A stretch of DNA of 64,000 bases from positions 25,978,001 to 26,042,000 of the forward strand of contig OZ281499.1 of NCBI GenBank assembly GCA_965637545.1, read 5' to 3'. Positions 33,701 to 64,000 of this stretch are shown in pieces. Numbering within the stretch: the stretch's first letter is position 1; each line of letters opens with the position of its first letter. The translations under genes and the position numbers were made by a program. The notes beneath the pieces are model-generated. The model did no database searches, was not told the DNA's origin, and saw only the letters and a list, made by a program, of their open reading frames with translations. Source of the DNA: Phallusia mammillata. Its lineage: Eukaryota.

Positions 33701-36064
33701 TGTTTTTTAAATGCAATGTAAATGTGCACAGGTGATACCGTGGGCTCCTGCGAGACACAAGCCTCATGTGAACTACTTTGCTCTGGCGTAGCGTAAGTTT
33801 GAATTAAGATCTTTGTTTTCCAATATATGTGCGTCCTACTTTTGCCTAATTCCCGCTTAGAGTCCACACAAACACCGTTACTTCAAACTTTGCAGGAGCT
33901 GCACATCAGCATGTTGCAATGATGGAGATTTTTGCAGCAGTCTCGCTGTAACTGACATAGTAGATGTGGTCCGATGTGCAACAGGATCCGTAACCGATGG
34001 TACACTCACTGGAACAATGGTTTGTGCGTCGACACAAAAATGCAGAAGAACTGAAACCACTTCGGGTATAAAACATTGACAAACTTGTTTGAATGTTTAG
34101 TCATACGAAATTACAAACAACTAAAAATGTTTAGGTGCCACTGTTACAACTGTTGGAGAATGTCTTGCTGCTGCAACGGCTTGTGATGATTCGTGTGCTT
34201 CACCGTAAGTTAAAGTTAGCCAACGCCACAATGACAAGGATTTTTAGTTTCACCGAAGCAACAAAACGTCACACTTTCCCTACAAATTTCATACAATCAG
34301 TATCAGATAAAATCACCTACTAAGATATTAATAACTAGTTTTTCCATTTTTTACAGTAATTGTGTAGCTGCGTGCTGCACAAACGACTTGTGCAACACTT
34401 TGACAGTCGCTGTACAGACAGGTATAGTTTGTATGGTTGGAACAACTACCACAGTTGGAAGCAACGCTGCAACTGGAAGTATGGTGCCCACACATTGCAG
34501 TCCAAACCTTTACTGTGCAAAAACCGAAACCACCACAACAGCAAGTAACAACTTGTGACAATATTTATGGCTGCATACCTCGACACAAACTTATTGTGAA
34601 GTAATATTACAGATAACGTGGATACTGTGGTTAGGGTTGGATCATGCCAGGCTGACGTCACTGCCTGTGATCTGCTCTGCACTGGTGTCACGTAAGTTGG
34701 ACGTTAATATAGAGTAAAAACGTGAAACTCAAAACCTGTATATGAAAACAGTAAGAACATCTTTTCATTGTTTTTCATTGTTATAACAAATGCATTCTGT
34801 AATTTTTGTTTATGACTTACATGTAAACTTCGATGTAAAATAATACATGTTTCATTGTACTCCAGGGGTTGTGTGGCAGCATGCTGTAATAATGCCGACA
34901 ACTGTAACAGCGAATCAGTCACTACAATCAAGAATGTAGTGACCTGTGGAGTTGGCACATTGGCTAGCAACGTATTTCCGACCCCAGCTATGGCTTGCCA
35001 AGCTACCGAACAATGTGGGAGAACAGAAACAACAAGTGGAGGTAAGTTTTGACATCTTGTTGAAATGTTTTAACTCTCGGTAATGTGTAACTTAATTTAG
35101 TTAAAATGTAAATAGGTATACACCCATTTGAATAAAATGTCGTTTCAGGCGCTACTACAGTGGTAGGATCTTGCTCAACAGCAGCTTCATGTACAACTGG
35201 ACTCTGTGGATCAACCTCGTAAGTTTAAAACAACATTTCGCTTGATGATTTCTCTCACATAACGCGCAGCACTCATCAGCACAAAACTGACACGCTTAGA
35301 AAGTTCGCAGCCAATTGAAACTGAATAAACTAAATCACTTTTTTGCCCACGTATTAACCAATGAACCATACTGTGTTGCAGAGGTTGTGTGGCAGCTTGT
35401 TGCAACGTGGCAGATGGATGTAACAGTCTGACAGTTGAAACACAAACAGCAAGACAATGTTTGACTGGAACAACCACGCAAGTTGGAAGTGCCGATGCAA
35501 CTGGAAGTTTGACTCTTCAGCATTGTGCAAGTGGAGAAATGTGTGGAAGAAAAGAAACAACAACCACAAGCGGAGGTAAATGATAATTGTTGTATTCTAT
35601 ACAGACATAAATTAACATCTTTTTACGTGTTTAGACACATCTACAGTGGTAATAGTTGGATCCTGTAGCACTGCAGCACAATGCAACGATGGAACTATGC
35701 TTTGCAATGGGTAAGTGGGATATATAATTCAATACCAGCGTTCGGGTGAAAAGAAAAATACCTTTTCATTTAAACCATTATACCGAAAAGTCTAAAACTA
35801 GAAAGCCTTGTCTGTGCAAAACCTAACTGGAGTGTTAAGTAATTACTTTCAAAAACATGTTTTAAATGCAGGGTTACAGGTTGCATCGAGTATTGTTGTG
35901 ACACTGACAGTTGCAACTCTGCCGCTGTCACTACAACAACCACTACTACAACCACTGCATCAACTACAACAACCGTAACAACCACATCTGGTGCTGAACA
36001 CGCAGCACAAATTAATATGTTGGTGATGATGGGTCTTGTGGTTCTCGGTTGGTTTATGGCTTAA
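30782..36064 (+). CDS. Gene C: signal peptide + 8 LU-like domains + Thr stalk + GPI tail, intact
   Basis: Exons 30782-30947, 31135-31195, 31434-31609, 31858-31921, 32106-32275, 32814-32874, 33218-33387, 33732-33792, 33896-34065, 34135-34204, 34357-34544, 34613-34691, 34866-35041, 35149-35218, 35382-35575, 35635-35710, 35872-36064. All GT-AG, open frame. Confidence 0.9.
32527..32599 (-). pseudogene. tRNA-derived sequence (tRNA pseudogene or SINE head) within an intronic insertion
   Basis: GCCTGTA TA GCTCAGTTGGTAAAGC ... GTAAG TACGAAT CCCAC TGCAGGC: 7-bp acceptor stem and A-box intact; T-stem, B-box and anticodon arm degenerate. Lies between 10-bp direct repeats aattagtaga (32302-32311, 32766-32775). 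Confidence 0.7.
33515..33693. mobile_element. Degenerate hAT MITE in intron of gene C
   Basis: 5' end cagtggtgggattcagccggtt, 3' end tgaatcctatttactg, internal aaccgg motifs; TSD not recognisable. Confidence 0.55.
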
Positions 36065-37087
36065 TCGATGTGTTTCCAATGCATCATCATTACTGTGTTT
36101 GTGTGATTTAGAGAATATATATCCAAGTTTAAACTATTTTCTTACGTTGCACATGGATTTCAACCTACTGTGAAGTGTGTTAATGTAAGCTGTGTCTCAG
36201 TGTTAAAATACAATTGAACCGATTCTGTACATTCCAAAAGCGTTAAAAATTTACAACGTCAAATACAATTGTCTTCCACCTGTGGTTTACGAAGTGGACA
36301 ACATTAGCTCATGTGCAATGAAACGCCTACAGTAGTTCGAATCACAGTACGTCAGGGGTATTTGCAACTAATGAACTGTTTGGTTTGGGTCTGTAGTGCT
36401 GGTGTCATTACCTGGTTTCTAAAAGCTGTGAACATTGACAAACAAAGAGATTATCTGTTTTAGTATAGACTACCCGTCCAAATCATTAGAAACTGGAATT
36501 GACCGACAGCAATAGCTAAAACACAAAACAAATACAACTCGAAAAGAAATTTGTTTTGGTGAACATGAAATATATGTTAACTGACATTCGACAAGCTTGT
36601 TTTCGTGTTGTGCAAAACAAGATACAATTATAGGTATCTTCATTTCATTCGTCTCATGGAAGGCAGGTACGAAGCTTTAAAGCGTGAAGACAGAAAAAGG
36701 CAATGGCGTCTACAACAACCCTTTCTGAAAGGAACGAGCAAGAGATCAACGTGTTATACTACCGTTCCGATTCTGTCTCAACGGTTGAGGCAACAACAAA
36801 ACCACAAGCACACCACTGACAGCAATCAACACGAAATATTTATCTTGCAAAATAGCTACATTAGCCACAACAACGTTTTGTTATTACTGTTACTTCTAAT
36901 GCTTTAATTTACTGTTGTATTCAAAAATGTGCATTGCACAGGAGGTAATATAGATTTTAAATCGCAAATCCTCATGGTTCTTAAACGTCATGTAGGTCAA
37001 CTTCACAAATTTTAAACGGTTGCGTAAACGAATCTGTTTAGACTGACCAAGTGATACGGAAGGAAAATCTATGGAACACTAAAACTT

Positions 37088-37320: not shown

Positions 37321-37479
37321 GTAAAGTGGAGAAATAAAGAAAGTCGGCAACGATGTGCTTGGATTTCGGGCGCAAAGCAGTTAAAAGTTCGCCAAAGTCA
37401 CATGAAAAAAATTTTAAAAAATGTTCGGAATTAATCCTCAGGAGCTTCCTGAGTTTTAATCTTGTAAATAAAATCGATT

Positions 37480-38035
37480 TCAGGATTCGTCTTCGTGAAA
37501 AAAACACCTTTCAAAACAAAACACAAAACTAACTATTTTAAACATGTTGCAATACCAACTTGCTCTGATCGAAAATGTTTGGCTGGAACAACCACCCAAG
37601 TTGGAAGTGCAGCAGCAACTGGAAGTTTGACTCTTCAGCATTGTGCAAGTGGAGAAATGTGTGGAAGAAAAGAAACAACAACCACAAGCGGAGGTAAATG
37701 ATAATTGTTGTATTCTATACAGACAGATATTAACATCATTTTACGTGTTTAGACACTTCTACAGTGGTAACAGTTGGATCTTGCAGCACAGCAGCGGAAT
37801 GCAACGTTGGAAACATGCTTTACAACGAGTGAATGGGATATATAAGGGAAAAATACCTTTTCATTTAACCAATCATACCGAAAAGTCTAAAACTAGAAAA
37901 AAAAACTAACTGGAGTGTTAAGTACTTTAAAAAACATGTTTTAAATGCATGGTTACAGGTTGCATCGAATATTGCTGTGACACTGACAGTTGCAACTCCG
38001 CCGCTGTCACTACAACAACCACAACCACCACAACT
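37480..38035 (+). pseudogene. Deletion-derived LU-family pseudogene (3' end of a gene C-like copy)
   Basis: 37480-37570 matches gene C intron 2 (31305-31390), fused to mid last-domain exon 37573-37693. Short exon 37753-37828 has Cys-to-Tyr. Terminal-exon acceptor is mutated (tgcag to tgcat). Thr tract joins directly to 3'-flank sequence, deleting the GPI signal. Confidence 0.88.
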
Positions 38036-38878
38036 TTACAACGTCAAATACAAGTGTATATCTTTCAGCTGTGGTTTACGAAGTGGACAACGTCAGCTCA
38101 TGTGCACTAAAACGCCTGATTGTTATTTTTAAACATAGAACATGCAGTAGTTTGAATCATAGTACGTCAGGGGTATTAAAAGTGCTATGCCAAATCAAGC
38201 CGCTTTTGCAAGTAATGAACCGTTTGGTTTGCGTCTGTAAAGGGATCATTAACGGAGGGTTGCGATTTGAAGCGATTAACTGTATAAATATAGGCTAGCC
38301 GTCTCAAGCATTTAAAACTGGAATAGGCCGACAGTAATAACAAAACACAAAACAAATACAGCTCGAAAAGAAATTAGTTTTGGTGAACATGAAATGTATG
38401 TTAACTGACATGCGACAAGTTGGTTTTATTGTTATATAAAACCAGATACAATCATAGGTCCTTCATTTTCCTCGTCTCATAGAAGGCAAGTACGAAGATT
38501 CAAAGCGTGGAGTAAGAAAAAGGCAATGACGTCTACAACAAATCCTCTCTAGAAGAACCGAGCAGGAGATCCACGTGCTATACTACAGTTCCAATTCTGT
38601 CTCAAATGTTGAAGCAGTAACAAAATCACAAGCACACCGCTAACAACAACAAAACAAACATTTCAGTTTCAAAACAGCTGCATTAGTCACAATAACTTTG
38701 TTTAGCGTTGTTAATTTGAGTGATTAAAAAATGTGCATTGCACAGGAGCTAATACAGATTTTTAGTCGCACATCCTAATGGTTGTTAAATGTACAAGTAG
38801 GACAACTTTACAAATCTTAAACGGTTGTTTAACGAATCTGTTTTAGACCGACCAAGTGCAATAGAAGGAAAAGACTTC

Positions 38879-39096
38879 AATTAAAGTGAACAGGGGCACG
38901 AAATAAACGCCGATCCTCACCGCACACGACCAGTCAACACGTGGAAGCGACCTTTGGAAAATTTCTAATGGCGCTGAGCGAGGGAAAAAAGAAAAGTTTT
39001 GGGGTAATCAGACTCCCTTGAATGAGTCGGGACGCAGCGATGTAGTGAATATAAGGAGGGGGCTGCCACGTTTTTGTTCAGTTCAGTGGACTTACA
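38879..39096 (+). promoter_or_regulatory. Core promoter plus micro first exon of gene D
   Basis: CACGTG 38938, GGAAAATTTC 38956, gactc-N8-gagtc, TATAAG 39050, Inr TCAGTT with A at 39080 (exactly 30 nt), donor gtaagt 39097, acceptor tgcag 39515. Confidence 0.75.
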
Positions 39097-39563
39097 GTAA
39101 GTGTAGAAATAAAGAAAGTCGGCAACGATGTGCTTGGATTTCGGGCGCAAACGAGAAAGATTTTGCGGCGAAGTGGTAGCTCAATTTAGTGAGTAAAATA
39201 AATCTGCAAAAGGCTCACAACACCAGTTTCGTGTATGACTTATAAATTTTTATCGTTTAAATACGACTAACTAGGAAGTTTTGTTGTGAAATTGCTACAA
39301 ACTTCGGGAAAAGAAGTTGGTTAGAGGAGATAAAAAATATGTACTGTTTATAGACAGAAAATTCAAAAAATTTAAAAACTCGGTCAATGACGTTTTCAAA
39401 TATTTAAAGTGACCAAAGTTGTGTGCGCATGTTGGGATGGCCTGAATACTGCGGGCAAACTTGTCATTAACTTACTCATTATTGTCAGTGATATATTTGA
39501 GCAAGTATGTTGCAGATACATTTGGATTTATTTCATCCAATATATTATCTTAAATCCAAAAAC

Positions 39564-42500
39564 ATGGGTCAAGTACGTGCAGCCGTACTGTTGGCTGTTT
39601 TCTTGTGTGGCGTTTCGTTCAGTGATGCTCAGCCTGCGACATGTCTGGTTGGTACTGCTGGTGGTATAACTCAAACTAGCTGTGATAACAATGAACTCTT
39701 TTGCGGAAGAACCGAAACTGCTAGTGGCGGTAAGTCGTAACTTGGGACAAAATTATGATTTGTTTACAAGTGTGTTCGTGTATTGTAAGTAAAGTCGGTT
39801 GTAAAGATAAAATGATTGTAAATCGGCATAACATTAAAACACATAATATGTCAGTACAAGTGTACATGTTTATTTTTAACTAATACTGTGTATTTTTTAG
39901 ATCCTACAGGCGCATGTGTCGCAGATCTGGCCGCTTGCGACGCTCAATGCGCCGGAATGACGTAAGTAGAAATTAAATTAAAATATTCCAAATATGCAAA
40001 AAATGCCGCAATGGACATGTGCTTAGTAACGGTTAAGCGCAATTACCGAGACTTTTTTGGTCACTGCGAAGTAAGACGTTTTGTTGCATTGAGTTTGCCT
40101 GTAACGCTTATTTTAGGGGCTGTGTATCGGCTTGCTGCAATGATGCTGTCGACTGCAACACCGGGGTCGCAGCAATGAGAGGAACAGTGACATGTGGGGT
40201 TGGGGTACATGACGGCAGCGCGTTCGCTACCCCTGCAATGGCGTGTGACGCGGGAGATCTGTGTGGAAGGAAGGAAGTAACAGCGAACAATGGTGGTAAG
40301 AATATGCAGCCAACATCATAGTGTTTCTTTTGCAATAAATAAATAAAATATGTGAAACTATTTTGGCTGACAACAACGATTAATAAACTTGAACTAAAAA
40401 TAAAAACGAAAAAATGGAAGTAAACTGGTTTAAAGCTCACAGAGTTTCTAAGTTGACTGCTTTTTCAAAAGCAAATGCCATTGCATTTATTAAAAACATA
40501 CCTTTCACAGATGTAACCACCACTGGATCTTGTTCAACTGTGGCTGAATGTGAGGCACTCTGCGATAGTGACACGTAAGTGATGTTGAGTTTCTTTAAAC
40601 ACTTAGAAAATTCGGTATGCCACAAACACAAACAAAACGGATTTTTTAGATCAAATAAGTCCAGTGTCAGCAGGTTTAGATATTTTTTACATGTAGTCTG
40701 ATATTTTTACCATAGGAATTGTGTATCGGCATGTTGCAATGATGCTGACACCTGCAACACTCGGACAGTGACGCAGATGAGCAACATTGTGCGATGTGGA
40801 ACTGGTGCAAGCGCCACTGCAACACTGTTGACTTGTGCAGCTGGATCGCTTTGTGGAAGAAAGGAGGTTGGAGGCAGTAAGTGTGATTTGCAATGCTCAG
40901 TTTAAAGGTCGCAAGACCTGCTACAATACTTATGAATCGTACTAAAAGTTTGTATTTAATTGAAGCTCCAACAGTCACCGGAACATGTTCAACTCAAGCA
41001 GAATGCGATGCCCTGTGTGCTGATACTACGTAAGTTTGGAATAATGTTATAGCGGGGGGAAATTGCTTTACCACAGTTTTGGAAAATGTGGCAGAAGGTT
41101 CTGCAAATCAAATATAATTTGTTTTTCAATGCATTGCTAGGGTATTTATAATATACAAATGGGCCGAAGACAATGAGCAATCGAAGCCAGTTGATTAAAC
41201 GAATGTTAAATTTTTTAAATAAAACAGGAATATCGGAACCATCCGGCGCATAACAAGTTATGTTATTTAACCTGAATTAGGATTTCTACCATAAGCAAAC
41301 AAATTTAAGCATTATACTGTTTACAGAGACTGCACAGCTGCATGCTGCAACAATGCTGATGACTGCAACAGCCGAACAGTAGCAGAGATCGAAGCCAAAA
41401 TTGTATGTGGAACTGGAACTTGGGCTAACAATGCATTTCCTGCAGCCACTACTTGTGCCGCTGACGAGCTTTGCGCACGAACAGAAACAACATCAGGTTC
41501 AAGTGAGTGTCAGATACATACCTTGGTCATAACAACAATCGGTTGTACGTTACCAACACATAAAACTTGCAAACACATGATGCTTGTACAAATTTATGCA
41601 GTAACACTAGCAGATATCCCGAAGCTACTCTTGCTACAAAAGCGGGGAATAAGTTACCACATCTGATACATTGCCTTTACATTTAAAACACACTTTACAA
41701 ACTGCTGTCTGTAAAGTTCAGAAGTATACGCTATAAAGCTGTGTTTGAGTCAAAAGAAACGTCACTACCAGGACATCGGCATTTTGTTTGGAACGTTGGT
41801 GTCTTATTTCAATTTTTTAAATAAGACATTTCTCTTTCACAGCCACCACCATTGTCGGATCGTGTCAGACTCAGACAGCATGTGAGGGACTTTGCGACAG
41901 TGCAACGTGAGTTACGTGGCTTAAGCATAGATTGACACAAGTATTAATTTAACCTTATAAATGGATACTTCAAACATAAGTTTCGTATTGCGCTTAAAAT
42001 GTAATTTACTTTTGTAAACTACTTTCAAAAAATATCAAGCACATAATATTTGATCAGGTGTTGTTTATTTGCATGGAATAGGAACAAAATATGCTTTATA
42101 CCTCCCAGGTTTGCTAACATAGATAAAAACACAGATTTAGCACACTTTTGATTTAACATCACACTCCTAAACGGTAACTACTTTTTTGAGTTTAAGATAT
42201 CTAAGTTAAATATCAACATCGCAATATTATCAGGGGTTGTATATCGGCTTGCTGCAAGGATGGGGATTATTGCAACACTCGGGATGTAGCAGATATAGAC
42301 AACGTGGTTCTGTGTGGGACTGGAGCTGACCCAACTGCTGCATCAATGACATGTGCTGTTGGATCGCTATGTGGGCGAACATTAACTACAAGTAGGAAAT
42401 AAATCATGTTGTGGTTTATTAGAAAAGTTTTTTTACTGGTAGATATTTGTAGGCACTATTGCTGGAACTTGCTCGACCCAGGCTGAATGTGACAGTCTAT

Positions 42501-45441
42501 GTGCCGGCACTGGGTAAGTTTGGACGATTTGGTTATTGAATGTTTTTGAATTCAAAAAGGCCCTTAGAAAACCCAAAGTAAAGTGTTCTGTAAAAGAGCT
42601 TTTATTTTTTTGACCTGTGCGATATGATTCTTGCATTTCGAATTGTATGTTGTCACGTTACCCTTTTATCTCTTTCTTTAATTTAATTTTACAGAAGCTG
42701 CACATCAGCTTGTTGCAGTGACTCAGACAATTGTAACACCCGAACAGTAGTACAGATTGCAGGTAGAATAAGATGTGGGACTGGAACTTGGGCTAACAAC
42801 GCATTTCCTACTGCTACCACTTGTGCCGCTAACGAGCTCTGCGCAAGGACAGAAGTGTCAGGAGGTAAATAAACCAAACTTAATTTAGCAAACTGACATT
42901 TCCTTTCGAGTTTATACGATAATCCGTTTGGCCAAAAACCTAAACTGATGACTTTTTACTTGTACCGACAACCACACACAATAAATATTCCAACAGTTTA
43001 ACGTGTAACCCAAGTTGTGCATAGTGCAAAGTTCTACTTTGTAAAATGCCCAATCTTATTTCCAGGTGCTACAGAAGGATCGTGCCAGACACAAGCTGGA
43101 TGTGACTTGCTCTGTGCTGGAGTCACGTGAGTAGAATTTTCAACATACATAAAAATTGCTGCATCTTGTGATAAAATCTAACTCGCCAGTTATTTTTACT
43201 TTTACATTTATCTTGCGTTCATCGTTTTGCTTAACAACCTGCCTAGGTAGAAAAACATAAAATGTTAGATATTTTGCAGGGGTTGCACATCTGCATGTTG
43301 CAACGATGGAGATTTTTGCAACAGTCTCGCTGTAACTGACATAGTAGATGTGGTGCGATGTGCTACAGGATCCGTAACTGATGGAACACTCACTGGAACA
43401 ATGGTCTGCGCGTCCACAGAAAAATGCAGAAGACGTGAAACTACTTCGGGTATGAAACAGAGACAAACTTGTTTGAATGTTTAATCATACGAAATTACAA
43501 ACAACTAAATATGTTTAGGCGACGCTGTTACAACTGTTGGAGAATGTCTTGCTGACGGAACGTCTTGTGATGATTCGTGTGCTTCACCGTAAGTTAAAGT
43601 TAGCCAACGCCACAATGACAAGGATTTTTAGTTTTACCAAAGCAACAAAACGTCACATCGCAAAATCAACATTTGACATTTTCATACAATCAGCGTCAGA
43701 TAAAATCACTCACTGAGACTTTAATAACCACTTTGACAATTTTGCAGAGATTGTGTTGCTGCATGCTGCACAAACGACTTGTGCAATACCTTGACAGTCG
43801 CTGTACAGACAGGTATAATTTGTATGGTTGGAACAACTACTACAGTTGGAAGCAACGCCGCAACTGGAAGCATGGTGGCCACTCATTGCAATCCCAATAT
43901 GTTCTGTGGAAGAACTGAAACAACCACAACAGCAGGTAAAAACATCGTGCGGTTTAAGTCACAAAGTATCCGTCGGAATTTTTTAACAAAACCACAATTT
44001 TCAGACAACATGGACACAGTGGTTGTTGTAGGATCATGTCAAGCTTCAGCAGGCTCATGCGACTTGCTCTGTGCAGATGACTCGTAAGTTAACAAGCTCA
44101 CACATTCTACAAAAATCAACATGATCAATAATGCACAATTTGTAGAAACTGCGTTCGCGCATGCTGCAACGATGCGGACGGTTGCAACAGTGTTACGGTT
44201 GCTATGATGACAAGCACGCTGACTTGCTACACAGGAACGGTCTCTGGAACAACTTTAACCGCAACAACGGCCTGCACCACAGCAAATCACGTTTGTGCCA
44301 GAACAGAAACGACAACCGGAACGGGAAGTAAGTGTGATCAAATCTTAAAAACAAACGTAGAAAACTAAAAAACAACTGATGTACTTGCCTATTTGCTTTG
44401 CTCAGTCCAACCAATTCACTCAATTGTAATGTTTTTAGATTCAGCCGCAGTTGCAACCGTTGGATCGTGTCAAGCTCAGAGCGCATGTGCAACATTGTGT
44501 GGCTCAACTCCGTAAGTTTTATATGAGATATACGTTCATCTCATTGATCATTTATAGAATATTATATATTCACGATTACCTATATTAAACACCATTCAGC
44601 TTTTATTAAACACCACAACGACAAGGGGGTATTATAACCGGCAACACATTTTTCACAGAAATTGTGTGAGTGCTTGCTGCAGCAGTTCGGATCTCTGCAA
44701 CAGTTTAACAGTGAGCCAACAAACAGCCCGAAACTGTTACGTTGGAAGTTCAACTTCAGACACACCAGTTATGGATATGACTTACACTCGGTGTGCTGCA
44801 TCCGAACAGTGCGGAAGAACTCAAACCTCTGCAACATCTGGAAGTAAGTCTTGTGCGACGTTAATGCTATTTTTTCTCATGTACGAACCCTGACTAAAGT
44901 ACTGGCAAACGGCATTTACTCAATGTTATGAACTAAATGAATGAAACGAGGACATATACTTTTGCAGACATTTTTTCTAATGCTTTGCTAATGTTTAGGT
45001 ACAACAACAGTGACTACAGTTGGATCTTGTACAGCAGCAACTGCATGCGACACACTTTGTGGAACGTAAGTTTGAGAAAAAATATAATCATAAATTGATG
45101 CTACTTTATCAAATTTCAAGCAAACCTTTGCCCTTAACGTGTACGTAAATGTATTCATACAAACTTTGTCCCATCATAGGTGATAATAACATCATTGTCT
45201 TGTAACATGCATATTAACATACAAGCAGCAAAACATGATTATGTTATTTCACAGGGCGGCAAACTGCGTATCAACTTGCTGTGACACTGATGGTTGCAAC
45301 TCTGCCGCTATTGCCACAACAACAACCACGACTACAACCACTGCTGCAGCCACAACAACCACTGGTGGTGCTGAACATGCAGCACAAATTAATATGTTGG
45401 TGATGATGGGTCTTGTGGTTCTCGGTTGGTTCATGGCTTAA
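39564..45441 (+). CDS. Gene D: signal peptide + 10 LU-like domains + Thr stalk + GPI tail, intact
   Basis: Exons 39564-39729, 39901-39961, 40117-40295, 40511-40574, 40716-40876, 40966-41029, 41327-41502, 41843-41906, 42234-42391, 42453-42513, 42695-42864, 43066-43126, 43280-43449, 43519-43588, 43748-43935, 44005-44083, 44146-44327, 44439-44511, 44659-44843, 44999-45065, 45255-45441. Confidence 0.9.
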
Positions 45442-45741
45442 TCGATGTGTTTCCAATGCATCATCATTACTGTGTTTGTGTGATTTAGAGAATATATATC
45501 CAAGTTTAAACTACTTTTTTACGTTGCACATGGATTTCAACCTACTGTGAAGTGTGTTAATGTAAGCTGTGTCTCAGTGTTATGATATATTTGAACTGTT
45601 TCTGTACATTCCAAAAGCGTTAAAATTTTCAAACTTTAAATACAACAGTAAAAATTTCAGCATAGTGTCTGTTGTTTACGAGGTAGAAAATATTGAATCT
45701 TGCACACCAAACTTTTGATGCTAAAAGAAAACGTAGAACAT

Positions 45742-52500: not shown

Positions 52501-55500
52501 ATGGTACAGTTGTGACAACAATGGGATCATGTCAAGATTCTGTCGCCACTTGTGACGCTCTTTGTGCAGACACCGCGTAAGTTTTTGAATATGCATTGGT
52601 CCGATGCAACAATTCAACAATAATTCAATACTATGCATCATGCTAAATTTATCATAATTTCTGTTAAAACCTTTTTTCAAAGCACAGTTTTCAAAGTGTA
52701 GTTGCTCAGTCAAAAAAGTTTGTCCGAGTTTATTTCAGTATTTTTAACATCCATTTTATATTATTCAGGAACTGCGTGTCAGCCTGTTGCAATAACGAAG
52801 ATAACTGCAACAGAGAGTCTGTGGCTGATATGGGAGCAACAATTGCGTGTGGAACTGGAACAATGGCTAATGGAGCGTTTCCTACAAGCACCACTTGCAC
52901 CGCTAACCAGCTTTGCGCGAGGACCGAAATTGGCAATGGTAAAATTTTAAACCGCCCTAATAAAAAGTGAATAAAAATTTACAACATAATGTTAGAAATG
53001 CATTTTCATCGAATACAATAAAAAATGCCCGTGTTGGTAACATGCCCATCACATATCAAAACAAACAAACAAACCGTTTAACATTATTCACTGTAAAAAC
53101 AAAGAATTTGTCTGCAGCTGTGGAGGGATCGTGCCAGACACAAGATGCATGCGATCTACTCTGTGCTGGAGTCGCGTAAGTTGATTTTTTACATTTACCA
53201 ACAGAAAGGTGTGGCATGAAAAGCCACCATTTTCAATGTATCGACCTAATCAAACAAAAGGGGCGTTGTTTGCGGTTTTACATTATAAGAGAAAGGCCAC
53301 GTCTGTTATAGTGGGCTACACACGTAGTTGATCGTGTGCACGTCAAACTAGCAAAAACTTGTGTCATTTTATTGAAATATTTAAAGTATTATCAAGCGCT
53401 TTAACAGCAGTTATAATATTCATTTGGCACACACACACAAAATTAAATATTGTAACTTGTTATTTCGCTAACTCCCAGAAAAAATGGAAGTCAAATATAT
53501 ATATCAAATATAAGCTTTCAGGGTTTTTGTTTATTTCCTATCACAGGGGTTGTACATCAGCATGTTGTAATGATGCCGATAACTGCAACACTCGGACTGT
53601 GGCACAAATGCAAATGGTTGTTCGATGTGGAACTGGGTCTGCAACAGATGGAAACCTCCCTAACACAATGACTTGTGCATCTGGTCAACAATGCCAAAGA
53701 ACTGAAACCACTGCAAGTATGAAGTATTGCATTTTATAGTCGGTCGCGTTCATTACATGATTGACATCGGAATTATTATTGCAGGTAACGTTGTTACAAC
53801 TGTTGGAATGTGCATTGCTGGAGATGCCACGTGTGGAACTGGATGCGCTGCAGCGTAAGTTAAAAAGCACAAGCTTAAAGCTAAATTTAAGCTACAATTA
53901 ACCACCCGAAGCATAAACGTGGAGAAAAAAAATCAAAGAAAACGTGTAACGAGTTCGCACATTATTGTGGTCGTCAGTTCAAATAATAATGTCTTATACA
54001 CGCACAAGAAATCATTTTTGTTCAAGTACAGATCTTTAATGTCCTTAAATATTGTTCTTGTTTTTGCAGGGATTGCGTGTCAGCTTGTTGCAACGACGCA
54101 GATGGATGTAACACTCTGTCAGTGGCAACACAAACAGCAAGACAATGTTTGACTGGAATGACCACCCAAGTTGGAAGTGCAGCAGCAACTGGAAGTTTGA
54201 TTGCTACGCATTGCCCCGCTGGTGAAATGTGTGGAAGAAAACAAACCACAACCACAAGTGGAGGTAGACTGCCGTACAATGTACCAACATCTTAAACCAG
54301 TGCTCTTCAACCTTTTTTGTCTTGGTGAACCCCTAAACTTGTTGTGACGAACTCATGCACCCTGTTTACTTAAAAAGGTTAACTGAGATAAAAGCGATAT
54401 TAAAAATCATTATGCGTATCATCATGTCAATCAAACGGAGCGGAGATCGCAAAAATTGTTTAATTGCTACCAATACTCCAGCATATGTTCGCGAATTTTC
54501 TGTAAAACACCGGAGAAAAGGCCAAAACTCGATGTCCTAATACAGCGGTTCCCAAACTGGGGTCCGCGGTCCCTTAGAGGTCCGTGAGGCAATTTGGGGG
54601 GACCGCGAAGCGCTTGAAGTAGTTCTATAATCTTATTTGGCGTCAGTTTGTGCTTCTAAATCACTTTAAAATCAAAGTAGAATTGAGAATCGACTGCCTC
54701 CATTGCTAAACAATGGCCTTTATAGAATGACAACTATCAAAAATGCAATTGTTCGCGCACAATCGTAATGTTTTTGTCCTGTTTGTGATGTCACATGCTG
54801 TCTTTGAATGATTGTTATGCGCAATTTTGCATAACTGGCTAAAATCCTGCAATCAACTTTCGTTTTTATGAAATACACATTTAGGCTTAAGGCACGCGAG
54901 CCCTCGAAATAATGGCAAAGGGACCGTTTTGAGAAAAATATGAAAAAGTTTGGGAACCACTGTCCTAATATAATCCGACTGTAACGCAGACACGATCAAA
55001 CTTGACACGGGGATAAAACATTAAAAAAGTTCACCTTGGTTCACATCACATGAAACCTACGTCATTTTTCTAATATCCTCACAGTCAAATATTAATGGTT
55101 CGTTAAAAGTTTGTGATGCACCCTTGTATACCCCTTCGTACTGGTGCACCCCATGCACATTTTGTGTGTTCAAAGACAAACACAAGTTTAACCACCCATG
55201 TTAGAAGTGTGTTCAAGAAGTTTAAAATTGTGCATATATTTCTGCCTGCAAAAAAGTAATCAAACTAAAAAATCGCAAATACATATAATCTACACCATTG
55301 GATCGCAATACACACCAGGGGATGAGTACGACAATAACATCATTTTACGTATGTTTAGATGTGGCTACAGTGGTAACAGTTGGATCTTGCAGCACAGCAG
55401 CCGAATGTAACGATGGAAACATGCTTTGCAATGGGTGAGTTGGGAGGTTATGCACGCAATTCACCGCCTATTAGTCGTTCAAACAAAATCGGATGCCTAA

Positions 55501-55784
55501 CAGATACTTATATCATACCAAAGCTAAAATAGCTTAAAACAAAACAAACAAATTATTGCAAAATGGTGACAAAGTGTTTCTTATGCAGGGCTGCAGGTTG
55601 CATCGAATATTGCTGTGACACTGATGGTTGCAACTCTGCCGTTGTCACTACAACAACAACCACCACCACTACTACAACCACAACAACAACTGCAGCAACC
55701 ACCACAGCTGGTGCTGAACATGCAGCACAAATTAATATGTTGGTGATGATGGGTCTTGTGGTTCTCGGTTGGTTCATGGCCTAA
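49505..55784 (+). CDS. Gene E: signal peptide + 7 LU-like domains + Thr stalk + GPI tail, intact
   Basis: Exons 49505-49679, 49760-49829, 49940-50097, 50157-50235, 50450-50601, 51812-51878, 51945-52141, 52501-52576, 52769-52938, 53118-53175, 53547-53716, 53785-53854, 54070-54263, 55359-55434, 55589-55784. Confidence 0.9.
50697..51767 (+). mobile_element. Probable non-autonomous Helentron/DINE-like insertion in gene E intron
   Basis: Intron is about 1.2 kb versus about 0.1-0.5 kb for most cluster introns. Starts aactagaa; ends acagacaaaaacaata followed by hairpin ccttc-gtg-gaagg and cataat. Confidence 0.5.
54543..54962. mobile_element. hAT MITE (420 bp) in gene E intron, sister of 22084-22493
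   Basis: TIRs cagcggttcccaaact / agtttgggaaccactg; perfect 8-bp TSD tcctaata. Possibly nested in an older hAT-like element starting cagtgctcttcaaccttttt at 54298. Confidence 0.93.
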
Positions 55785-58147: not shown

Positions 58148-61100
58148 ATGGGTCAATTACGAGCAGTTGCACTGTTAGCGGTTTTCTTTGTGTGTGGCAT
58201 TTCGTTCAGTGATGCTCAAATTACGACATGTTTGGTTGGAACTGGTGTTGGAAGTGCTGTTGGTAATATTGCTCAAGATAACTGTGCAAGCAGCGACTTC
58301 TTTTGCGGACGAACCGAAACAGCGGGTGGTGGTAAGTCGTAGCTTGAGTTAAACTATGATTTGTTTATAAGTGTGTTCGTGCATTTAGAAGTAAAGAAGG
58401 TTGTAATAATAAGATAATTGTAAATCGGCATAACATTAAAAACACAATATATCAATACAAGCGTGCATGTTAATGCTGTGTATGTTTTAGATCCTGTCGG
58501 CTCATGTGTCGCAGATCTGGCGGCTTGCGACGCTCTTTGCGCCGGAATCACGTAAGTAGAAACAAAATCAAAAATGTTCCTAAACTTTTTTCATGGAAAC
58601 TCCGAAATAGACACGTACCTGGTAATGGTGAAGCGCAATTGCTTAGAATTATATGGTCACTGCATGGTAAAACGTTTTGTCTTACTGTATTTGCATGTAA
58701 CTCATTTTTCAGGGGCTGTGTATCTGCTTGCTGCAATGATGCTGTCGACTGCAACACCGGGGTCGCTACAATGCGAGGAACAGTGACATGTGGGGTTGGG
58801 GCAAATACCGGCGCTTTTCAAACCCCTGCAATGGTTTGTGACGCGGGAGATCTCTGTGGGAGGAAGGAAGTGACAGCGACTGATGGCAGTGAGTATGCAT
58901 AGTTGAGAATAAAGCTTTCTTTGGGGCATTAAACATACATGCAGTCTTTGAAGCAAACTATACACTTTTAATCACTTTAAAACGAACGATAACGTTTATG
59001 TAAAAAATTGCTTCAAAACAATAAACGTCAAATTTTAAAAAATACAAAGAACACTACAACATTTTACAGCTGAAACCATCACTGGATCGTGTTCAACTGT
59101 GGCTGAATGTGAAGCACTCTGCGATGGCGAAACGTAAGTTGTGTTTCGTTCTTTACAAACTTTACCCACAATGTGTTAATTGGCGACAAAACTATGTGAA
59201 AAATAACGTCAAGGGTCAGACGACTAAATCTTTTTATGTTTGGGCACGAAAATCCTTAAATTCTGAAACCAGAAATGCAATTGCACGCATATTCAAACTC
59301 AAATAATCGCCACTAATAACATGCAAAGTGTTGTTGTTGCAGGGATGCATGTGTATCGGCATGTTGCAATGATGCTGACACCTGTAATACTCAGACAGTG
59401 GCAGAAATGAGCACCATTGTACGATGTGGATCTGGGACGGACGCTACGGCCGCAATGCTGACTTGTGCATCGGGATCGCTTTGTGGCAGAACGGAAGTTG
59501 ATGGTGGTGGGTATTAATTTTAAAACGGCAATACTAATAATTTAATATTAAAATTAGAATTACTTATTCGCGCTTTTTGAATTCTATAAAGTAAAAATTA
59601 CATTCTGTAAAAGCATTGTGGGATAGCAATGTATGTGACAAATCGATCAATGGTTATTTTGTACGTTAAAACAAAGTGCCAAGCTTTCGCAAAACCTTTT
59701 TACAGGCGCCACAACCGGGAGTTGTTCCACAGCGATGGAGTGCGAGACGCTCTGCGGCAGTACCGAGTAAGTTAAAACGATATAATTATGGTTTATTTCG
59801 TTTTAACTTTTCTCCAAGCTCAGACTTAAAAGGAAAAATTGGTCCTTAAGAAAGACAGGAAAGTGTCACTAACTCTTTATTTGACTTCTCAGAAACTGTG
59901 TATCGGCATGTTGCAATGATGCTGACAACTGCAATACCCGCACAGTGGCACAGATGAGCAACATTGTGCGATGTGGAACTGGTGCAGACGCTACTACAAC
60001 ACTGTTGACTTGCGCAGCTGGATCGCTTTGTGGAAGAAGGGAAGTTACCGGAACAGGTATGGGATTGTTTAGCTTGCTTATATGAAAAGCACTGGTGCCA
60101 TGTTTCAAACATTAACATACATTGACTTTCAAAGTAGATGAAAGTGGACAAGGCAAACAATAGATAAATAATATTCGAAATTGGAACTGGTATAGTTTTA
60201 CATTTACCAGTTTAAAAAATTATAATAACCAACGCGCTTAGAAGCGACTGCAATCTAAAACGCCAGTGCAGCCAACATTTTAAAGTAGGTAAATGTCAAT
60301 GTGCGGATATATTTACCAAAGAACTTGTATCATCTTTCCAACATACTATTTTACACTTCTGAGAATTTTTAAACTAAGTTTGTGTTTTTGCTTAAAGGTT
60401 CAGCAATAACCGGATCATGTTCAACTCAAGCAGAATGCGACGCCCTTTGTGCTGGAACCGCGTAAGTGAGAAAAAGAATTGTTTAAATCAAAATAAAAAC
60501 ATCAAAAATCTATAGCAAGAAATTATAAATTATCGACGAAACTAATTGAAAACAGCAGAAGTGAAGCAACTTTACCATTAGCACAACGAACATAAAAGCG
60601 CATTTTTCTGCGACTAAAAATTACAAAAACCATTTTTTTGTTTCACAGATCTTGCACAGCTGCATGTTGTAACAATGCTGATAATTGTAACGCCCGAACA
60701 GTAGAACAAATGGAAGACAGAATTGTATGTGGAACTGGAACATTAAATGATGGAGCGTTTCCTGCAGCTACGTTTTGCGCCGCCGGGGAACTTTGTGCAA
60801 GGACAGAAACAACATCGGGTTCAAGTGAGTGTCAGATACAACACTTGGTCATAACAACAATCGGTTATTAGTAACCAACACAGGATGCTTACTGCCTAAT
60901 ATCCCGAAGCTGAAAAACAATCTTGGCGCTAGGCGGAGGAAAGGCAACTCATGTGTTACATTGAATTCACATGTTAAACGCTCATAAAAACCGACTTTGC
61001 AAAACACTCACTATAAAGATTAGAATTGTATGCTATAAAGGTACATTGAAGTCAAACGAAACGTCACTACCACGACATCGCCCTCTTGTTTGGAACGTTG

Positions 61101-64000
61101 GCATCTTATTTCATTTTTTAATAAGACATTTCTCTTTTACAGCCACCGCCATTGTCGGATCGTGTCAGACTCAGACAGCATGTGAAGGACTGTGCGACAG
61201 TGATACGTAAGTTATGTGGCTTAAATAACTCACTGGAAGCATAGAAGATTCATCAAACACAAAAATTAGTTCAATCTTTAGCTAATAAATGGGATTAAAA
61301 TAAATGGATAATTACCAACTTTTCTGTAGCGCCGCACATTTAATTTACTTTTTACAGACTACTTCTTGCTGTTTTTCATCACAACATAATATTACAACAA
61401 AAAGTAGTTTATACCTAATCCGTGTACATAACATAGATGAAAACCAATACACACCTTTAAGATAAATATCGACATCACATTATTATCAGGGGCTGTATAT
61501 CGGCTTGCTGCAAGGATGGAGATTATTGCAACACTCAGTCAGTAGCAAATATAGACAACGTGGTTCTGTGTGGGACTGGGTCTGACCCAACAGCGGCATC
61601 GATGACTTGCGCTGCTGGATCGCTATGTGGGCGAACATTAGATGGAAGTAAGAAATAAATCCTGTTGTGGCCTATTAGAAAAGTTTTTTTTTTTACTTTG
61701 ATATATTTTTAGGCACTATTGATGGAAGTTGCTCAACCCAGGATGAATGTGACAGCCTATGTACCGGCACTGCGTAAGTATGGGTCAAAAAATATTCACA
61801 AATTAAATTGTGCTGCAATCAAGCGGCGAAAACCTAGTGCGATTTAGTTATTTGAATTTTGATGCTTATAAATAAAATCAAAAAGGCCCTTAGAAAAAGA
61901 CAACCGAAAGTCAAGTGTGCACTAATTTTGTTGATCTGTGCAATATGTTTCTTGCATTTCGAATTGTATGTTGTCACGTTTCATTTTTTACCTTATCTTA
62001 ATTTAATTTTACAGAACCTGCACGTCAGCATGTTGCAGTGACTCAGACAATTGTAACACCCGAACAGTGGTACAGATTGAAACCAGAATAAGATGTGGAA
62101 CTGGAACTTTAACTGGTGGCGCGTTTCCTACAGCTACCACTTGTGCCGCTAACGAGCTCTGCGCAAGGACAGAAATAACAGGAGGTAAATAAGCCAAACT
62201 TTGTTTAGCCAGCCTACATTTCCTTTAGACATTCTTCCGTTTCGCAAAAAAACTCCCATTAGGGACTTTTTACATGCAACTATGCCTAAAACTGACAACC
62301 ACACACAACAAATTTTCGTCCTGTTTAACTTGTAACCAAATGAAGTTCTATATTGTAAAATACCAAAACTTATTTTCAGGTGCTACAGAAGGATCGTGCA
62401 AGACACAAACTGGATGTAATTTGCTCTGCGCTGGAGTCACGTGAGTGAATTTTTCCACGTATATGAAAATTTCTGCAACTTGTAATAAAAGCTGACATAT
62501 AGTTAGTTATTTTAACTTTCACATTTATCTGGCGTGCATCGTTTTGCTTAACAACCTGCCAGAGTGAAAACATTAAATGTTGGATATATTGCAGGGGTTG
62601 CACATCTGCGTGTTGCAACGACGGAGATTTCTGCAACAGTCTTTCTGTTACGAACATAATAGATGTGGTCCGATGTGGAATTGCGCCTGTAACGAACGGA
62701 GCATTCACTGCAACAATGGTTTGTGCATCTGGTCAAAAATGTCAAAGAACTGAAACAACTTCAGGTATAATCTGTTGCATAAAAATCTTTATCTTCATTC
62801 ATTACATAATTAAAACTGGGTTTATTTTTCAGGCCAAACTGTTACACTTGTTGGTTCATGTATTGCTGGAGATGCCACATGTGGATCTGGATGTACTGCT
62901 CCGTAAGTTTAAAAGCTCTAATGCTATCCAAATTGTTATCATGTCAACTTTAAATTGTCACAAAAAATTGAATCCAGCGTTCGTGACAACAAACAGTTAC
63001 AACTTGGAAGGAAACGGGTAGACAAAATCGCAAAGTCGACAGAATAAGGATATTTTGATTTGCAAACCGTAACATACTGATAGCCAATTAAAATTCGAAC
63101 TTTCTTAACTCGTTCCCTAGTAGGGAAAAGATCCAAACTTTATTTTAGTTTTTATGACTTAGCACTCAGATAAACACTTTTGTTTATTGGTTGCAGGGCT
63201 TGCGTGTCAGCTTGTTGCAACGACGCAGATGGATGTAACACTCTGTCAGTGGCAACACAAATGGCAAGACAATGTTACACTGGAACAACCACCCAAGTTG
63301 GAAGTGCAGCAGCAAATGGAAGTTTGACTGCTGAGCATTGCTCCGCTGGTGAAATGTGTGGAAGAAAACAAACCACAACTACAAATGGAGGTAGATTGCT
63401 GTCACAGTTACAATGCATCAACATCTAAAACTACAAACAACATCAATATACATAAACGCATTCAACCAACGAAGTCGTACATGTATTCGAAATACGCCAA
63501 GAATTTATGCCTGCAAACTGTACGCTTGTCATACAAAGCGTAAACATTACTTAACAACACACAAAATTACAATAGACATGGTGTTTAAGAAGACAATAAT
63601 ATATTTAATTTGTTTAGGTGAGACTACAGTGACAACAGTTGGATCTTGCAGCACAGCAGCTGAATGCAACGATGGAAACATGCTTTGCAATGGGTGAGTT
63701 GGTTATGCAAGCATTTGACCGTCTATTAATCGCCTAAACAAGATGTAGATGCCTATACTAAAAAAATACTCGATACCATGGCGTGCAACATTACAGCACG
63801 ATTATTAATATTGCAATAAGGTGAAAAAATCTTTTGCAGGGCTGCCGGTTGCATCGAATATTGCTGTGACACTGATGGTTGCAACTCTGCCGCTGTCACT
63901 ACAACAACCACAACCACCACTACTACAACCACTACAACAACTGCAACAACCACATCTGGTGCTAAACATGCAGCACAAATTAATATGTTGGTGATGATGG
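58148..64000 (+). CDS. Gene F: signal peptide + 9 LU-like domains + Thr stalk + GPI tail (last codons outside window)
   Basis: Exons 58148-58331, 58491-58551, 58713-58888, 59070-59133, 59343-59506, 59706-59766, 59893-60056, 60398-60461, 60649-60824, 61143-61206, 61490-61647, 61713-61773, 62015-62184, 62380-62440, 62595-62764, 62833-62902, 63197-63390, 63618-63693, 63840->64000. Confidence 0.9.

What the first reader, a model, noticed from the sequence alone, without database searches (positions are those of the whole stretch)
33896..63693. Paralogs are patchworks: module order shows recombination breakpoints
Seen, labelling long-exon types: A=?-f-g-h-i, B=x-c-b-g-i, C=a-b'-e-f-g-j-k, D=a-b-c-d-e-f-g-h-i, E=y-z-w-e-f-k, F=a-b-b-c-d-e-f-k. 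D matches F through a-f, matches C closely (introns included, 43280-43950 vs 33896-34550) through f-g, and matches A and B through g-h-i. F switches to the E-type end after f. Module f behaves as a crossover hub. Inference: ongoing unequal crossover or gene conversion generates new domain strings.
Basis: seen in the sequence. Interest (0 to 1): 0.7.

Follow-up and report, generated by a model that had tools for sequence, protein, structure and literature searches.

The report
Mosaic paralogs in a three-finger-like gene array
Neighbouring copies of a repeat-built surface-protein gene have swapped short stretches of DNA, so each copy is a patchwork of the others; this is real but is the ordinary behaviour of tandem gene families.

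Summary
The window carries a head-to-tail array of six genes (A-F) plus one gene fragment (P). Each gene is a chain of 5-10 cysteine-rich, Ly6/uPAR-like modules, each written as a long plus a short exon.

The patchwork reading also holds:
- Gene D is F-like through modules a-e, introns included.
- D is C-like from 43280-43325 to about 43900. Overall identity is 87%, and introns reach 91-96% in 60-bp windows.
- D is then A-like for about 300 bp, at up to 95%.
- D ends in a tail shared with C and E.
- Breakpoints are sharp (maximum chi-square, permutation p<=0.0005).
- Adjacent segments give conflicting trees (AU p=0.027 and 0.0004).
- Synonymous divergence differs 3- to 15-fold between segments of the same gene pair.

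The best explanation is germline non-allelic recombination: short gene-conversion tracts, plus unequal crossovers that add or remove exon pairs.

Two claims are weaker. Module f is not a special hub, with 2 of at least 11 breakpoints. "Ongoing" is only suggested, because the youngest tracts differ by 3-5%.

This is a known kind of process in a little-described family. First readers of this scan noted the same pattern in the next window and 24 Mb away.

The parts
30782..36064 (+). Gene C: exon 1 (30782-30947), 8 short and 7 long exons, terminal exon. String a-b'-e'-f-g-j-k-T.
   Evidence: Exon table with AG/GT sites and an open joined frame. Exon 1 located. Module types.
37571..39151 (+). P: a 5'-truncated tandem duplicate of gene C's tail and 3' flank. 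It starts inside the k long exon, has one Cys changed to Tyr, and has lost the GPI-signal end.
   Evidence: 35453-35956 vs 37571-38035 is 84.7% identical, and 36247-37376 vs 38032-39151 is 75%. ORF text. Identity to C reaches 99% in the 60-bp window at 35515, near the start of the copy.
39564..45441 (+). Gene D: exon 1 (39564-39729), 10 short and 9 long exons, terminal exon. String a-b-c-d-e-f-g-h-i-T. This is the clearest mosaic.
39498..43279 (+). F-like block of D. It is collinear with F 58083-62594, with intron identity 70-88% in 60-bp windows. C's introns are unalignable here.
   Evidence: well-aligned introns K2P 0.16-0.34. dS for D-F is 0.26-0.33 for a, b, d and e.
43280..43325 (+). Breakpoint 1 in D, from F-like to C-like. 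It lies in the conserved CxxACCNDxDxCN-coding 5' end of the f long exon.
   Evidence: Maximum chi-square 161.6, permutation p<=0.0005. Left of it, 168 sites favour F and 29 favour C; right of it, 5 favour F and 83 favour C. The exon-only version gives chi-square 83.7. Four-way alignment.
43273..43943 (+). C-like tract of D (f long exon, intron, f short exon, intron, g long exon), matching C 33889-34552.
   Evidence: 87.4% identity over 673 columns. Introns are 91-96% identical in 60-bp windows. K2P is 0.08 and 0.20 inside the tract, while flanking introns sit at the shuffled null. dS for C-D is 0.33-0.35 here against 0.77-1.69 at a, b and e (Fisher p=3.5e-5).
43875..43995 (+). Breakpoint 2 in D, from C-like to A-like. 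It lies at the 3' end of the g long exon or in the following 69-nt intron.
   Evidence: Maximum chi-square 204.4, p<=0.0005. Alignment.
43998..44331 (+). A-like tract of D (g short exon, intron, h long exon), matching A 7517-7849. Identity fades within the h long exon.
   Evidence: 88.9% over 334 columns. The short exon is 92% and the intron 95% identical (K2P 0.05). Sixty-bp windows fall from 95% to 81%.
44659..44843 (+). The i long exon, homogenised among A, B and D while the flanking introns are at or near the random level.
   Evidence: A-D 96%, B-D 95%, A-B 93%. dS is 0.11-0.20. Flanking introns are 0.47-0.59 identical against a shuffled maximum of 0.47-0.57.
41422..41435 (+). Short patch shared by D's c and e long exons (its partner, computed by offset, is 42790-42803). 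The F orthologues differ from D but agree with each other.
   Evidence: Eight consecutive 'same-gene' sites among 26 informative sites, in the order 12 orthology, 8 same-gene, 6 orthology.
45276..45645 (+). 3' part of D's terminal exon plus about 190 nt of 3'UTR, shared with C and E. D's first ~20 nt of this exon are the A/B type.
   Evidence: D-C 89.4% and D-E 88.4% overall, rising to 93-99% in windows 45361-45600. Alignment. Breakpoint test p<=0.001.
49505..55784 (+). Gene E: string y-z-w-e'-f-k-T. Its 1095-nt intron carries a repeat copy.
   Evidence: The repeat 54537-54962 matches 22078-22493 at 89.9%.
58148..64000 (+). Gene F: string a-b-b-c-d-e-f-k-T. The terminal exon runs off the window.
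62700..62740 (+). Breakpoint in F, from D-like to E-like, in the 3' third of the f long exon.
   Evidence: Maximum chi-square 71.5 with introns and 38.8 with exons only, both p<=0.0005.
63191..63431 (+). The k long exon tract shared by F and E (E 54064-54297).
   Evidence: 89.2% over 241 columns. dS is 0.05 against 0.65-0.85 at e and f (p=2.3e-7).
59343..60056 (+). Tandem b-b exon-pair duplication in F. D's single b exon is closest to the second copy, but D's upstream intron matches the intron before the first copy.
   Evidence: F2-F3 are 84% identical. The tree gives (F2,(D2,F3)) with 96/83 support. Painting. All three are identical over about the first 50 nt of the exon.

Best explanation
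This is a tandem, same-strand array of paralogous genes. They encode secreted, probably GPI-anchored proteins made of 5-10 Ly6/uPAR-like ten-cysteine modules. Each module is written as an exon pair whose combined length is a multiple of three.

The pairs are similar to each other, both within a gene and between genes, and the genes sit next to one another. Germline non-allelic homologous recombination therefore acts on them in two ways.

1. Short, probably non-reciprocal gene-conversion tracts (about 14 bp to 0.7 kb) copy patches from one paralog or module into another. Examples are a C-like donor into D over f-g, A and D over g-short to h, the i exon among A, B and D, the k exon between E and F, the GPI-signal and 3'UTR block among C, D and E, and a c/e patch within one gene.

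2. Unequal crossover or slippage adds or removes whole exon pairs or gene tails. Examples are the b-b duplication in F, B's lack of the g-short and h-long pair, and fragment P.

Any exchange at equivalent positions keeps the reading frame, so each event yields an intact new protein.

Several tracts stop at or within a few bases of exon edges. Three boundaries sit in the conserved CC..CN-coding 5' end of a long exon or of the terminal exon. The likely reason is that introns are too diverged to carry a heteroduplex.

Shown: the mosaic, the sharp breakpoints, the incongruent trees, and the involvement of introns and synonymous sites.

Inferred: conversion rather than double crossover, the direction of transfer (D as recipient of the f-g tract), the germline setting, and the protein's surface location.
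For: - Tandem array with open, spliceable gene models.
- Module types confirmed by tree.
- Ancestry painting of all genes.
- Breakpoints by maximum chi-square, all at permutation p<=0.001.
- AU tests reject the alternative topology in adjacent segments.
- Intron divergence is K2P 0.05-0.20 inside tracts. Flanking introns are indistinguishable from shuffled sequence.
- dS differs between segments for the same gene pair: D-F p=0.001, C-D p=3.5e-5, E-F p=2.3e-7, A-D p=0.011.
- Direction: D's f exon is at dS 0.89 from F's, against 0.26-0.33 elsewhere. D's f introns do not align with F's. So D's f-g stretch is foreign to the D/F lineage.
- A run of 8 same-gene sites marks the c/e patch.
- Fragment P and the b-b duplication are footprints of unequal exchange.
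- RNA-like contigs join exons at four of the predicted splice sites in D's 3' half.
Against: - No event was seen happening. There are no alternative haplotypes, and no read was shown bridging a breakpoint (one search returned only short contigs).
- Conversion cannot be formally separated from successive double crossovers.
- Exon-only tracts (the i exon and the GPI-signal region) could owe part of their identity to selection on the nucleotide sequence.
- Donors may lie in the rest of the array beyond the window, so 'C-like' or 'A-like' names the nearest copy seen here, not necessarily the true donor.
- Trees rest on short segments of 160-240 nt.
Confidence: 0.85

Rival explanations
1. Differential loss only. 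An ancestral gene carried the full string a-b-c-d-e-f-g-h-i-j-k. Whole-gene duplicates then lost different exon pairs, with no exchange between copies.
For: All strings except B's are collinear with one master order, so deletions alone could produce the strings.
Against: It predicts one gene tree and uniform divergence for a given gene pair. Neither is seen. Trees conflict. C-D dS is 0.77-1.69 at a, b and e but 0.33-0.35 at f and g. Introns go from unalignable to 91-96% identical at sharp boundaries.
Confidence: 0.04
2. Assembly artefact. The mosaic genes are chimeras made by mis-joining reads from similar paralogs.
For: Tandem repeats are hard to assemble. Public contigs over D are short and fragmented, and none was shown to bridge a breakpoint.
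Against: Shared tracts are 87-97% identical, not identical. Exact matches across breakpoints are only tens of bases, far shorter than reads. Contigs from three independent DNA studies cover 29-30 of 30 bins of D at 93-100% likeness. All gene models stay in frame.
Confidence: 0.03
3. Hybrid genes by unequal crossover only. Each junction is a single crossover between misaligned neighbours, and no conversion is involved.
For: Tandem orientation, the copy-number change of exon pairs (b-b in F), and truncated duplicate P show that unequal exchange does occur here.
Against: D carries at least three short internal patches (14 nt, about 300 bp, about 660 bp) flanked on both sides by other ancestry. 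Each would need two closely spaced crossovers and would also duplicate or delete the genes in between.
Confidence: 0.08
4. Selection rather than exchange explains the exon-only identities (the i long exon and the GPI-signal end).
For: These stretches are coding, and their flanking introns show no similarity. dN/dS is low, 0.05-0.33 for i.
Against: Synonymous divergence is also low (0.11-0.20) while neighbouring introns are saturated. The C/D/E block continues about 190 nt into the 3'UTR at 93-99% identity.
Confidence: 0.1

Closest known systems
Concerted evolution and interlocus gene conversion in tandem gene families (for example the long-lasting mammalian gene pairs of PMC2720389; opsin, globin and RH loci from my own knowledge)
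   Same: Same-strand neighbours. Sharp tracts of raised identity that include non-coding or synonymous sites. Trees that differ by segment.
   Different: Here the unit is a repeated exon pair. Exchange can therefore also happen between different modules of one gene, and it can change the number and order of domains.
CD177 / CD177P1 conversion in the human Ly6/uPAR cluster (PMC4882059)
   Same: A multi-LU-domain, GPI-anchored family member altered by conversion from a neighbouring partial copy. In this window A has no first exon, and B has a changed cysteine, a changed CN motif and one shortened long exon with a weak donor site; both show tracts shared with D.
   Different: CD177 is one recent event with a known phenotype. 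Here there are many older tracts among six genes, in what appears to be an invertebrate (not identified), with no phenotype known.
Sea urchin Sp185/333 clusters (PMC3091723, PMC5103432)
   Same: Clustered genes whose products are mosaics of shared sequence elements. Segmental duplication, unequal crossover and conversion are invoked.
   Different: Sp185/333 mosaics lie inside one exon, with flanking microsatellites and very high similarity. Here the elements are exon pairs with introns, similarity is 70-97%, and purifying selection dominates.
Accelerated segment switch in exons (ASSET) of snake three-finger toxins (PMC2474615, PMC2711939)
   Same: The same protein superfamily by motif. Short exon segments are replaced while the neighbouring sequence is conserved.
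   Different: ASSET segments change to unrelated sequence of unknown source. Here a donor-like copy is identifiable and introns take part.
Exon shuffling by symmetric exon sets
   Same: Long exon (2 mod 3) plus short exon (1 mod 3) gives a frame-neutral unit. Pairs differ in number between paralogs.
   Different: The unit is offset from the domain: one domain spans three exons. Junctions therefore create hybrid domains rather than swapping whole domains.

Membership tests
Ly6/uPAR (LU, three-finger) domain proteins | Cysteine-rich domain of about 70-90 residues ending in CCxxxxCN | tested here: met
   There are 45 motif hits in series on the + strand. Each unit has ten cysteines. In the alignment of 38 long exons six cysteine columns are invariant, C6 and N14 are nearly so, and the 5' motif (C2, A5, C6, C7, C13, N14) is among the conserved columns. 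Spacing of the N-terminal cysteines differs from classical Ly6; that comparison is from my own knowledge.
Ly6/uPAR (LU, three-finger) domain proteins | Match to a curated family model (Pfam UPAR_LY6 or relatives) | tested here: inconclusive
   Eight single exons gave no such hit at E<=10. PDB sequence search gave none. Each domain is split over three exons.
Ly6/uPAR (LU, three-finger) domain proteins | Three-finger beta fold with a disulfide core | not tested
   No contiguous reference encodes a whole domain, so no structure was predicted.
Ly6/uPAR (LU, three-finger) domain proteins | Signal peptide and C-terminal GPI-attachment signal | tested here: inconclusive
   Judged by eye only. There are hydrophobic N-termini after the ATG in B-F. 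The terminal exon has a Thr-rich stalk, then small residues and a hydrophobic tail. No predictor was run.
Mosaic paralogs made by interlocus gene conversion / NAHR | Paralogs close together in the same orientation | tested here: met
   Six genes and one fragment lie on the + strand, with 1.5-10 kb between neighbouring copies.
Mosaic paralogs made by interlocus gene conversion / NAHR | Different segments support different trees | tested here: met
   AU p=0.027 (e exons) and p=0.0004 (f exons) against the alternative topology. In the long-exon tree, a gives (D,F),C and f gives (C,D),F.
Mosaic paralogs made by interlocus gene conversion / NAHR | Informative sites cluster at sharp breakpoints | tested here: met
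   Maximum chi-square 161.6, 204.4, 71.5 and 20.7, all at permutation p<=0.001.
Mosaic paralogs made by interlocus gene conversion / NAHR | The signal is present in introns and synonymous sites, so it is not convergence | tested here: met
Mosaic paralogs made by interlocus gene conversion / NAHR | Events seen as polymorphism, or polarised by an outgroup species | not testable with these tools
   Only short contigs were available and the single reads call is spent. No related eukaryotic genome is at hand.
Dedicated diversity-generating gene systems (Sp185/333-like, antigenic-variation-like) | Frequent recent exchange with diversifying selection | tested here: not met
   dN/dS is 0.05-0.50 in 37 of 38 pairs. 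The one exception is E6-F8, with 2 synonymous and 12 non-synonymous changes, too few to be significant by my own rough estimate. Most tracts are 5-25% diverged.

The most novel reading that the evidence does not exclude
The frame-neutral but domain-offset exon pair, together with the conserved CC..CN-coding exon start, works as a germline generator of new hybrid domains and domain strings for a surface-recognition family. If so, different individuals of this highly polymorphic species carry different strings. Copies that may be decaying, such as A (no first exon found) and B (altered cysteine and motif residues), would then serve mainly as sequence donors.
Probability: 0.12. Interest if true: 0.6.

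Novelty: new member of a known kind. Interest (0 to 1): 0.35.

Why it matters
It documents, with formal tests, how a little-described multi-domain Ly6/uPAR-like family diversifies. A profile of 38 long exons found only two ORF fragments among 1.84 billion representative proteins.

Small conversion patches and exon-pair gains and losses in a tandem array produce intact proteins with new domain orders and hybrid domains.

For annotation, it warns that orthology in this array must be assigned per exon, not per gene. Gene trees built from whole coding sequences will mislead.

If the strings turn out to vary between individuals, the locus would be a candidate recognition or immune-type system.

Tried and rejected
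- Pfam on eight single exons found no Ly6/uPAR model.
- PDB sequence search with a 111-aa stop-free stretch that reads through a 69-nt in-frame intron found nothing.
- The word-based protein search with the same stretch found nothing.
- A profile of 38 long exons against 1.84 billion proteins found only two 64-67 aa ORF fragments. A contig look-up for one of them found nothing.
- Reads were laid to test assembly and expression. Only short contigs came back, so breakpoints could not be bridged, and the organism stays coded.
- I tested whether the k long exon of E and F is a g/k hybrid, which would explain the f-to-k junction by a deletion. It is k-like throughout.
- I tested whether the exon-start motif gives long exact matches between unlike modules. 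The median is 9 nt and the maximum 20 nt, and only 28 of 48 matches of 14 nt or more lie in the first 50 nt. The motif is a modest substrate, not a striking one.
- The CC..CN hit at 10157 is spurious: stop codons surround it.
- Rfam found only a borderline tRNA-like hit.
- I sent no spliced, joined protein to any search or folding tool. Exons were concatenated only inside scripts, for frame checks, alignments, dS and trees.


Full report
**What is there**

The window has no N. On the + strand the motif CCx(3-6)C[N/D] occurs 45 times in a regular series from 6655 to 63862. The - strand has 9 scattered hits.

Stop-free stretches and a splice-site search give six gene models.
- A: 6391-9118
- B: 16134-20512
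- C: 30782-36064
- D: 39564-45441
- E: 49505-55784
- F: 58148 to beyond 64000

There is also a 5'-truncated fragment, P (37571-39151).

Every exon has AG and GT, and the joined frame is open to one final stop. Long exons (140-197 nt) are 2 mod 3 and short exons (58-88 nt) are 1 mod 3. A long plus short pair is therefore frame-neutral.

One ten-cysteine unit spans three exons. It uses the 3' two-thirds of a long exon, the short exon, and the first ~14 codons of the next long exon, which end in CCxxxxCN.

Genes B-F start with a hydrophobic leader. No first exon was found for A. The last exon encodes a Thr-rich stalk and a hydrophobic tail.

By motif this is a Ly6/uPAR-like, probably GPI-anchored family. 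I could not confirm that with a family model:
- Single exons give no Pfam hit.
- PDB sequence search gives none.
- A profile of 38 long exons finds only two ORF fragments among 1.84 billion representative proteins.

Exons were concatenated only inside scripts.

**The observation**

Most clades are well supported (bootstrap 91-100), and B4's attachment to the g group is weakest (83/67). The strings it gives are:
- A = x-g-h-i
- B = x-(c/e-like)-(b-like)-g-i
- C = a-b'-e'-f-g-j-k
- D = a-b-c-d-e-f-g-h-i
- E = y-z-w-e'-f-k
- F = a-b-b-c-d-e-f-k

The short-exon tree agrees where it has power.

The quoted match, 33889-34552 against 43273-43943, is 87.4% identical over 673 columns, introns included.

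Weak calls are A's first long exon as 'f', the long exons C3 and E4 as 'e', and B's 'c' and 'b'.

**Is it a patchwork?**

I painted each gene in 60-bp windows by its best-matching paralog. For D:
- F-like from 39541 to about 43300, with introns at 70-88%.
- C-like from 43320 to 43920, with introns at 91-96%.
- A-like from 43921 to about 44280, at up to 95%.
- The i long exon is 96-98% identical to A and B, with unrelated flanking introns.
- The last ~90 nt of coding sequence plus ~190 nt of 3'UTR is 93-99% identical to C and E (alignment).

F is D-like up to about 62600. It is E-like from its f short exon onward, with the k exon at 92% and the terminal exon at 94%.

Maximum chi-square tests on triplet alignments place the switches as follows:

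| Gene | Switch | Position | Chi-square | Permutation p |
|---|---|---|---|---|
| D | F-like to C-like | 43304-43307 | 161.6 | <=0.0005 |
| D | C-like to A-like | about 43993 | 204.4 | <=0.0005 |
| F | D-like to E-like | about 62720 | 71.5 (38.8 exons only) | <=0.0005 |
| D | terminal exon, B-like to C-like | 45378-45388 | 20.7 | <=0.001 |

A four-way alignment refines these. The first breakpoint lies in the conserved motif at 43280-43325. The second lies between about 43875 and 43995.

For genes C, D, E and F, using exons only:
- The e unit groups D with F. A C+D grouping is rejected (AU p=0.027).
- The adjacent f unit groups C with D (support 100/99). A D+F grouping is rejected (AU p=0.0004).

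Synonymous divergence tells the same story without using introns (Fisher tests):

| Pair | Segments | dS | Compared with | dS | p |
|---|---|---|---|---|---|
| D-F | a, b, d, e | 0.26-0.33 | f | 0.89 | 0.001 |
| C-D | a, b, e | 0.77-1.69 | f, g | 0.33-0.35 | 3.5e-5 |
| E-F | e, f | 0.65-0.85 | k | 0.05 | 2.3e-7 |
| A-D | g, h | 0.43-0.52 | i | 0.13 | 0.011 |

Intron distances agree. K2P is 0.08-0.20 inside the C-D tract and 0.05 inside the A-D tract. The introns just outside cannot be told from shuffled sequence.

A single gene tree is therefore rejected. Differential loss from a long ancestor cannot explain the data. Convergence cannot either, because introns and synonymous sites carry the signal.

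**Mechanism**

Short internal patches flanked on both sides by other ancestry are what gene conversion produces. Examples here:
- about 660 bp, C-like, in D
- about 300 bp, A-like, in D
- 185 bp, exon-only, at i
- about 240 bp at k, between E and F
- about 270 bp at the 3' end

The smallest patch lies inside one gene. D's c and e long exons share 8 consecutive sites (41422-41435) against their F orthologues. The run sits between 12 and 6 orthology-supporting sites.

Changes in exon-pair number need unequal exchange. Three cases are visible:
- F has b-b. D's single b is closest to the second copy, yet D's upstream intron matches the intron before the first copy. All three are identical over about the first 50 nt of the exon.
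- B's short exon after g is the h type. B therefore lacks the g-short plus h-long pair.
- P is a tandem copy of C's tail that starts inside an exon.

Direction. D's f exon and f introns are foreign to the D/F lineage. dS to F is 0.89 there against about 0.3 elsewhere, and the introns do not align. D is therefore the likely recipient, and a C-like copy the donor. This step is inferred.

Several boundaries lie at or near exon edges. Three sit in the conserved 5' end of a long exon or of the terminal exon: D's first breakpoint, the switch at D 45276, and the first ~50 nt shared by the b copies. The likely reason is that introns are too diverged to support pairing. That motif is only a modest substrate, however. 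Exact matches between unlike modules reach 20 nt at most.

**The two weaker claims**

*Module f as a hub.* I count at least 11 breakpoints in the window, and only two lie in f: the 5' end in D and the 3' third in F. 'D matches F up to f' and 'D matches C from f' are the two sides of one event. The f-to-k junction is shared by E and F by descent, because their introns there align at 63-79%.

*Ongoing exchange.* The youngest tracts differ by 3-5% (A-D) or have dS 0.05 (E-F k exon). Contigs from other individuals differ from the window by 1-6%. Recent events are therefore plausible, but no segregating variant was shown.

**Assembly**

Shared tracts are 87-97% identical, not identical. Exact identity across breakpoints is only tens of bases. 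Contigs from three independent DNA studies cover 29-30 of 30 bins of D.

No listed contig bridges a breakpoint, so this check is incomplete.

RNA-like contigs join 43935 to the g short exon, about 44511 to 44659, about 44843 to 44999, and 45065 to about 45255. These are the predicted splice sites. The contigs could come from an A-like copy.

**Comparison and novelty**

This is interlocus and intragenic gene conversion plus unequal crossover in a tandem family, a well-known process. Comparable cases:
- PMC2720389 for long-lasting conversion between mammalian gene pairs.
- PMC4882059 for CD177/CD177P1, within the Ly6/uPAR family.
- PMC3091723 and PMC5103432 for the mosaic Sp185/333 clusters.
- PMC2474615 for segment switching in three-finger toxins.

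A 2026 survey of invertebrate LU proteins describes one to three LU domains in sponge proteins, and the passages I read did not mention arrays like this one (PMC13719153).

What is particular here is the domain-offset, frame-neutral exon pair, so that junctions make hybrid domains.

Purifying selection dominates, with dN/dS 0.05-0.50 in all but one pair. I therefore see no sign of a dedicated diversity generator.

Earlier notes of this scan report the same kind of mosaic in the next window and 24 Mb away. Those are unchecked first readings, and I did not rely on them.

Noticed in passing
window 45361-45625; C 35990-36235; E 55700-55940: The last ~90 nt of coding sequence (the GPI-signal tail) and ~190 nt of 3'UTR are 93-99% identical among C, D and E. 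B matches part of it. Similarity ends abruptly. This could be conversion or a conserved 3'UTR element.
   Followed up: partly
window 38905-39125, 48339-48678, 56984-57253, 37014-37349: A 220-340-bp element at 77-88% identity recurs 0.4-1.2 kb upstream of the start codons of D, E and F, and also after C. It could be part of the array's repeat unit, a shared upstream exon or regulatory block, or a mobile element.
   Followed up: no
window 46323-46941: A tandem repeat of four copies of a 159-bp unit (88% matches) lies between genes D and E.
   Followed up: no
window 54537-54962 and 22078-22493: A 427-bp repeat at 90% identity. One copy lies inside E's unusually long 1095-nt intron and the other between B and C. 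It is probably a mobile element.
   Followed up: no
window 32526-32599 (-): A borderline tRNA-like Rfam hit (29.5 bits against a threshold of 29) lies inside C's 538-nt intron. It may be a tRNA-derived repeat.
   Followed up: no
window 43936-44004: D's 69-nt intron after the g long exon is in frame and has no stop codon. Retaining it would insert 23 residues without breaking the protein.
   Followed up: no
window 6391-9118 and 16134-20512: Gene A has no detectable first exon. Gene B has Trp in place of one motif Cys (17872-18047), His in place of the motif Asn (16918-17087), and a shortened long exon with a weak donor (18390-18529). Both may be decaying copies that still share tracts with D.
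   Followed up: partly
window 54070-54263 vs 63197-63390: The k long exons of E and F differ by 2 synonymous and 12 non-synonymous changes (dN/dS about 1.9). The counts are too few to be significant, but this is the only pair above 1.
   Followed up: partly
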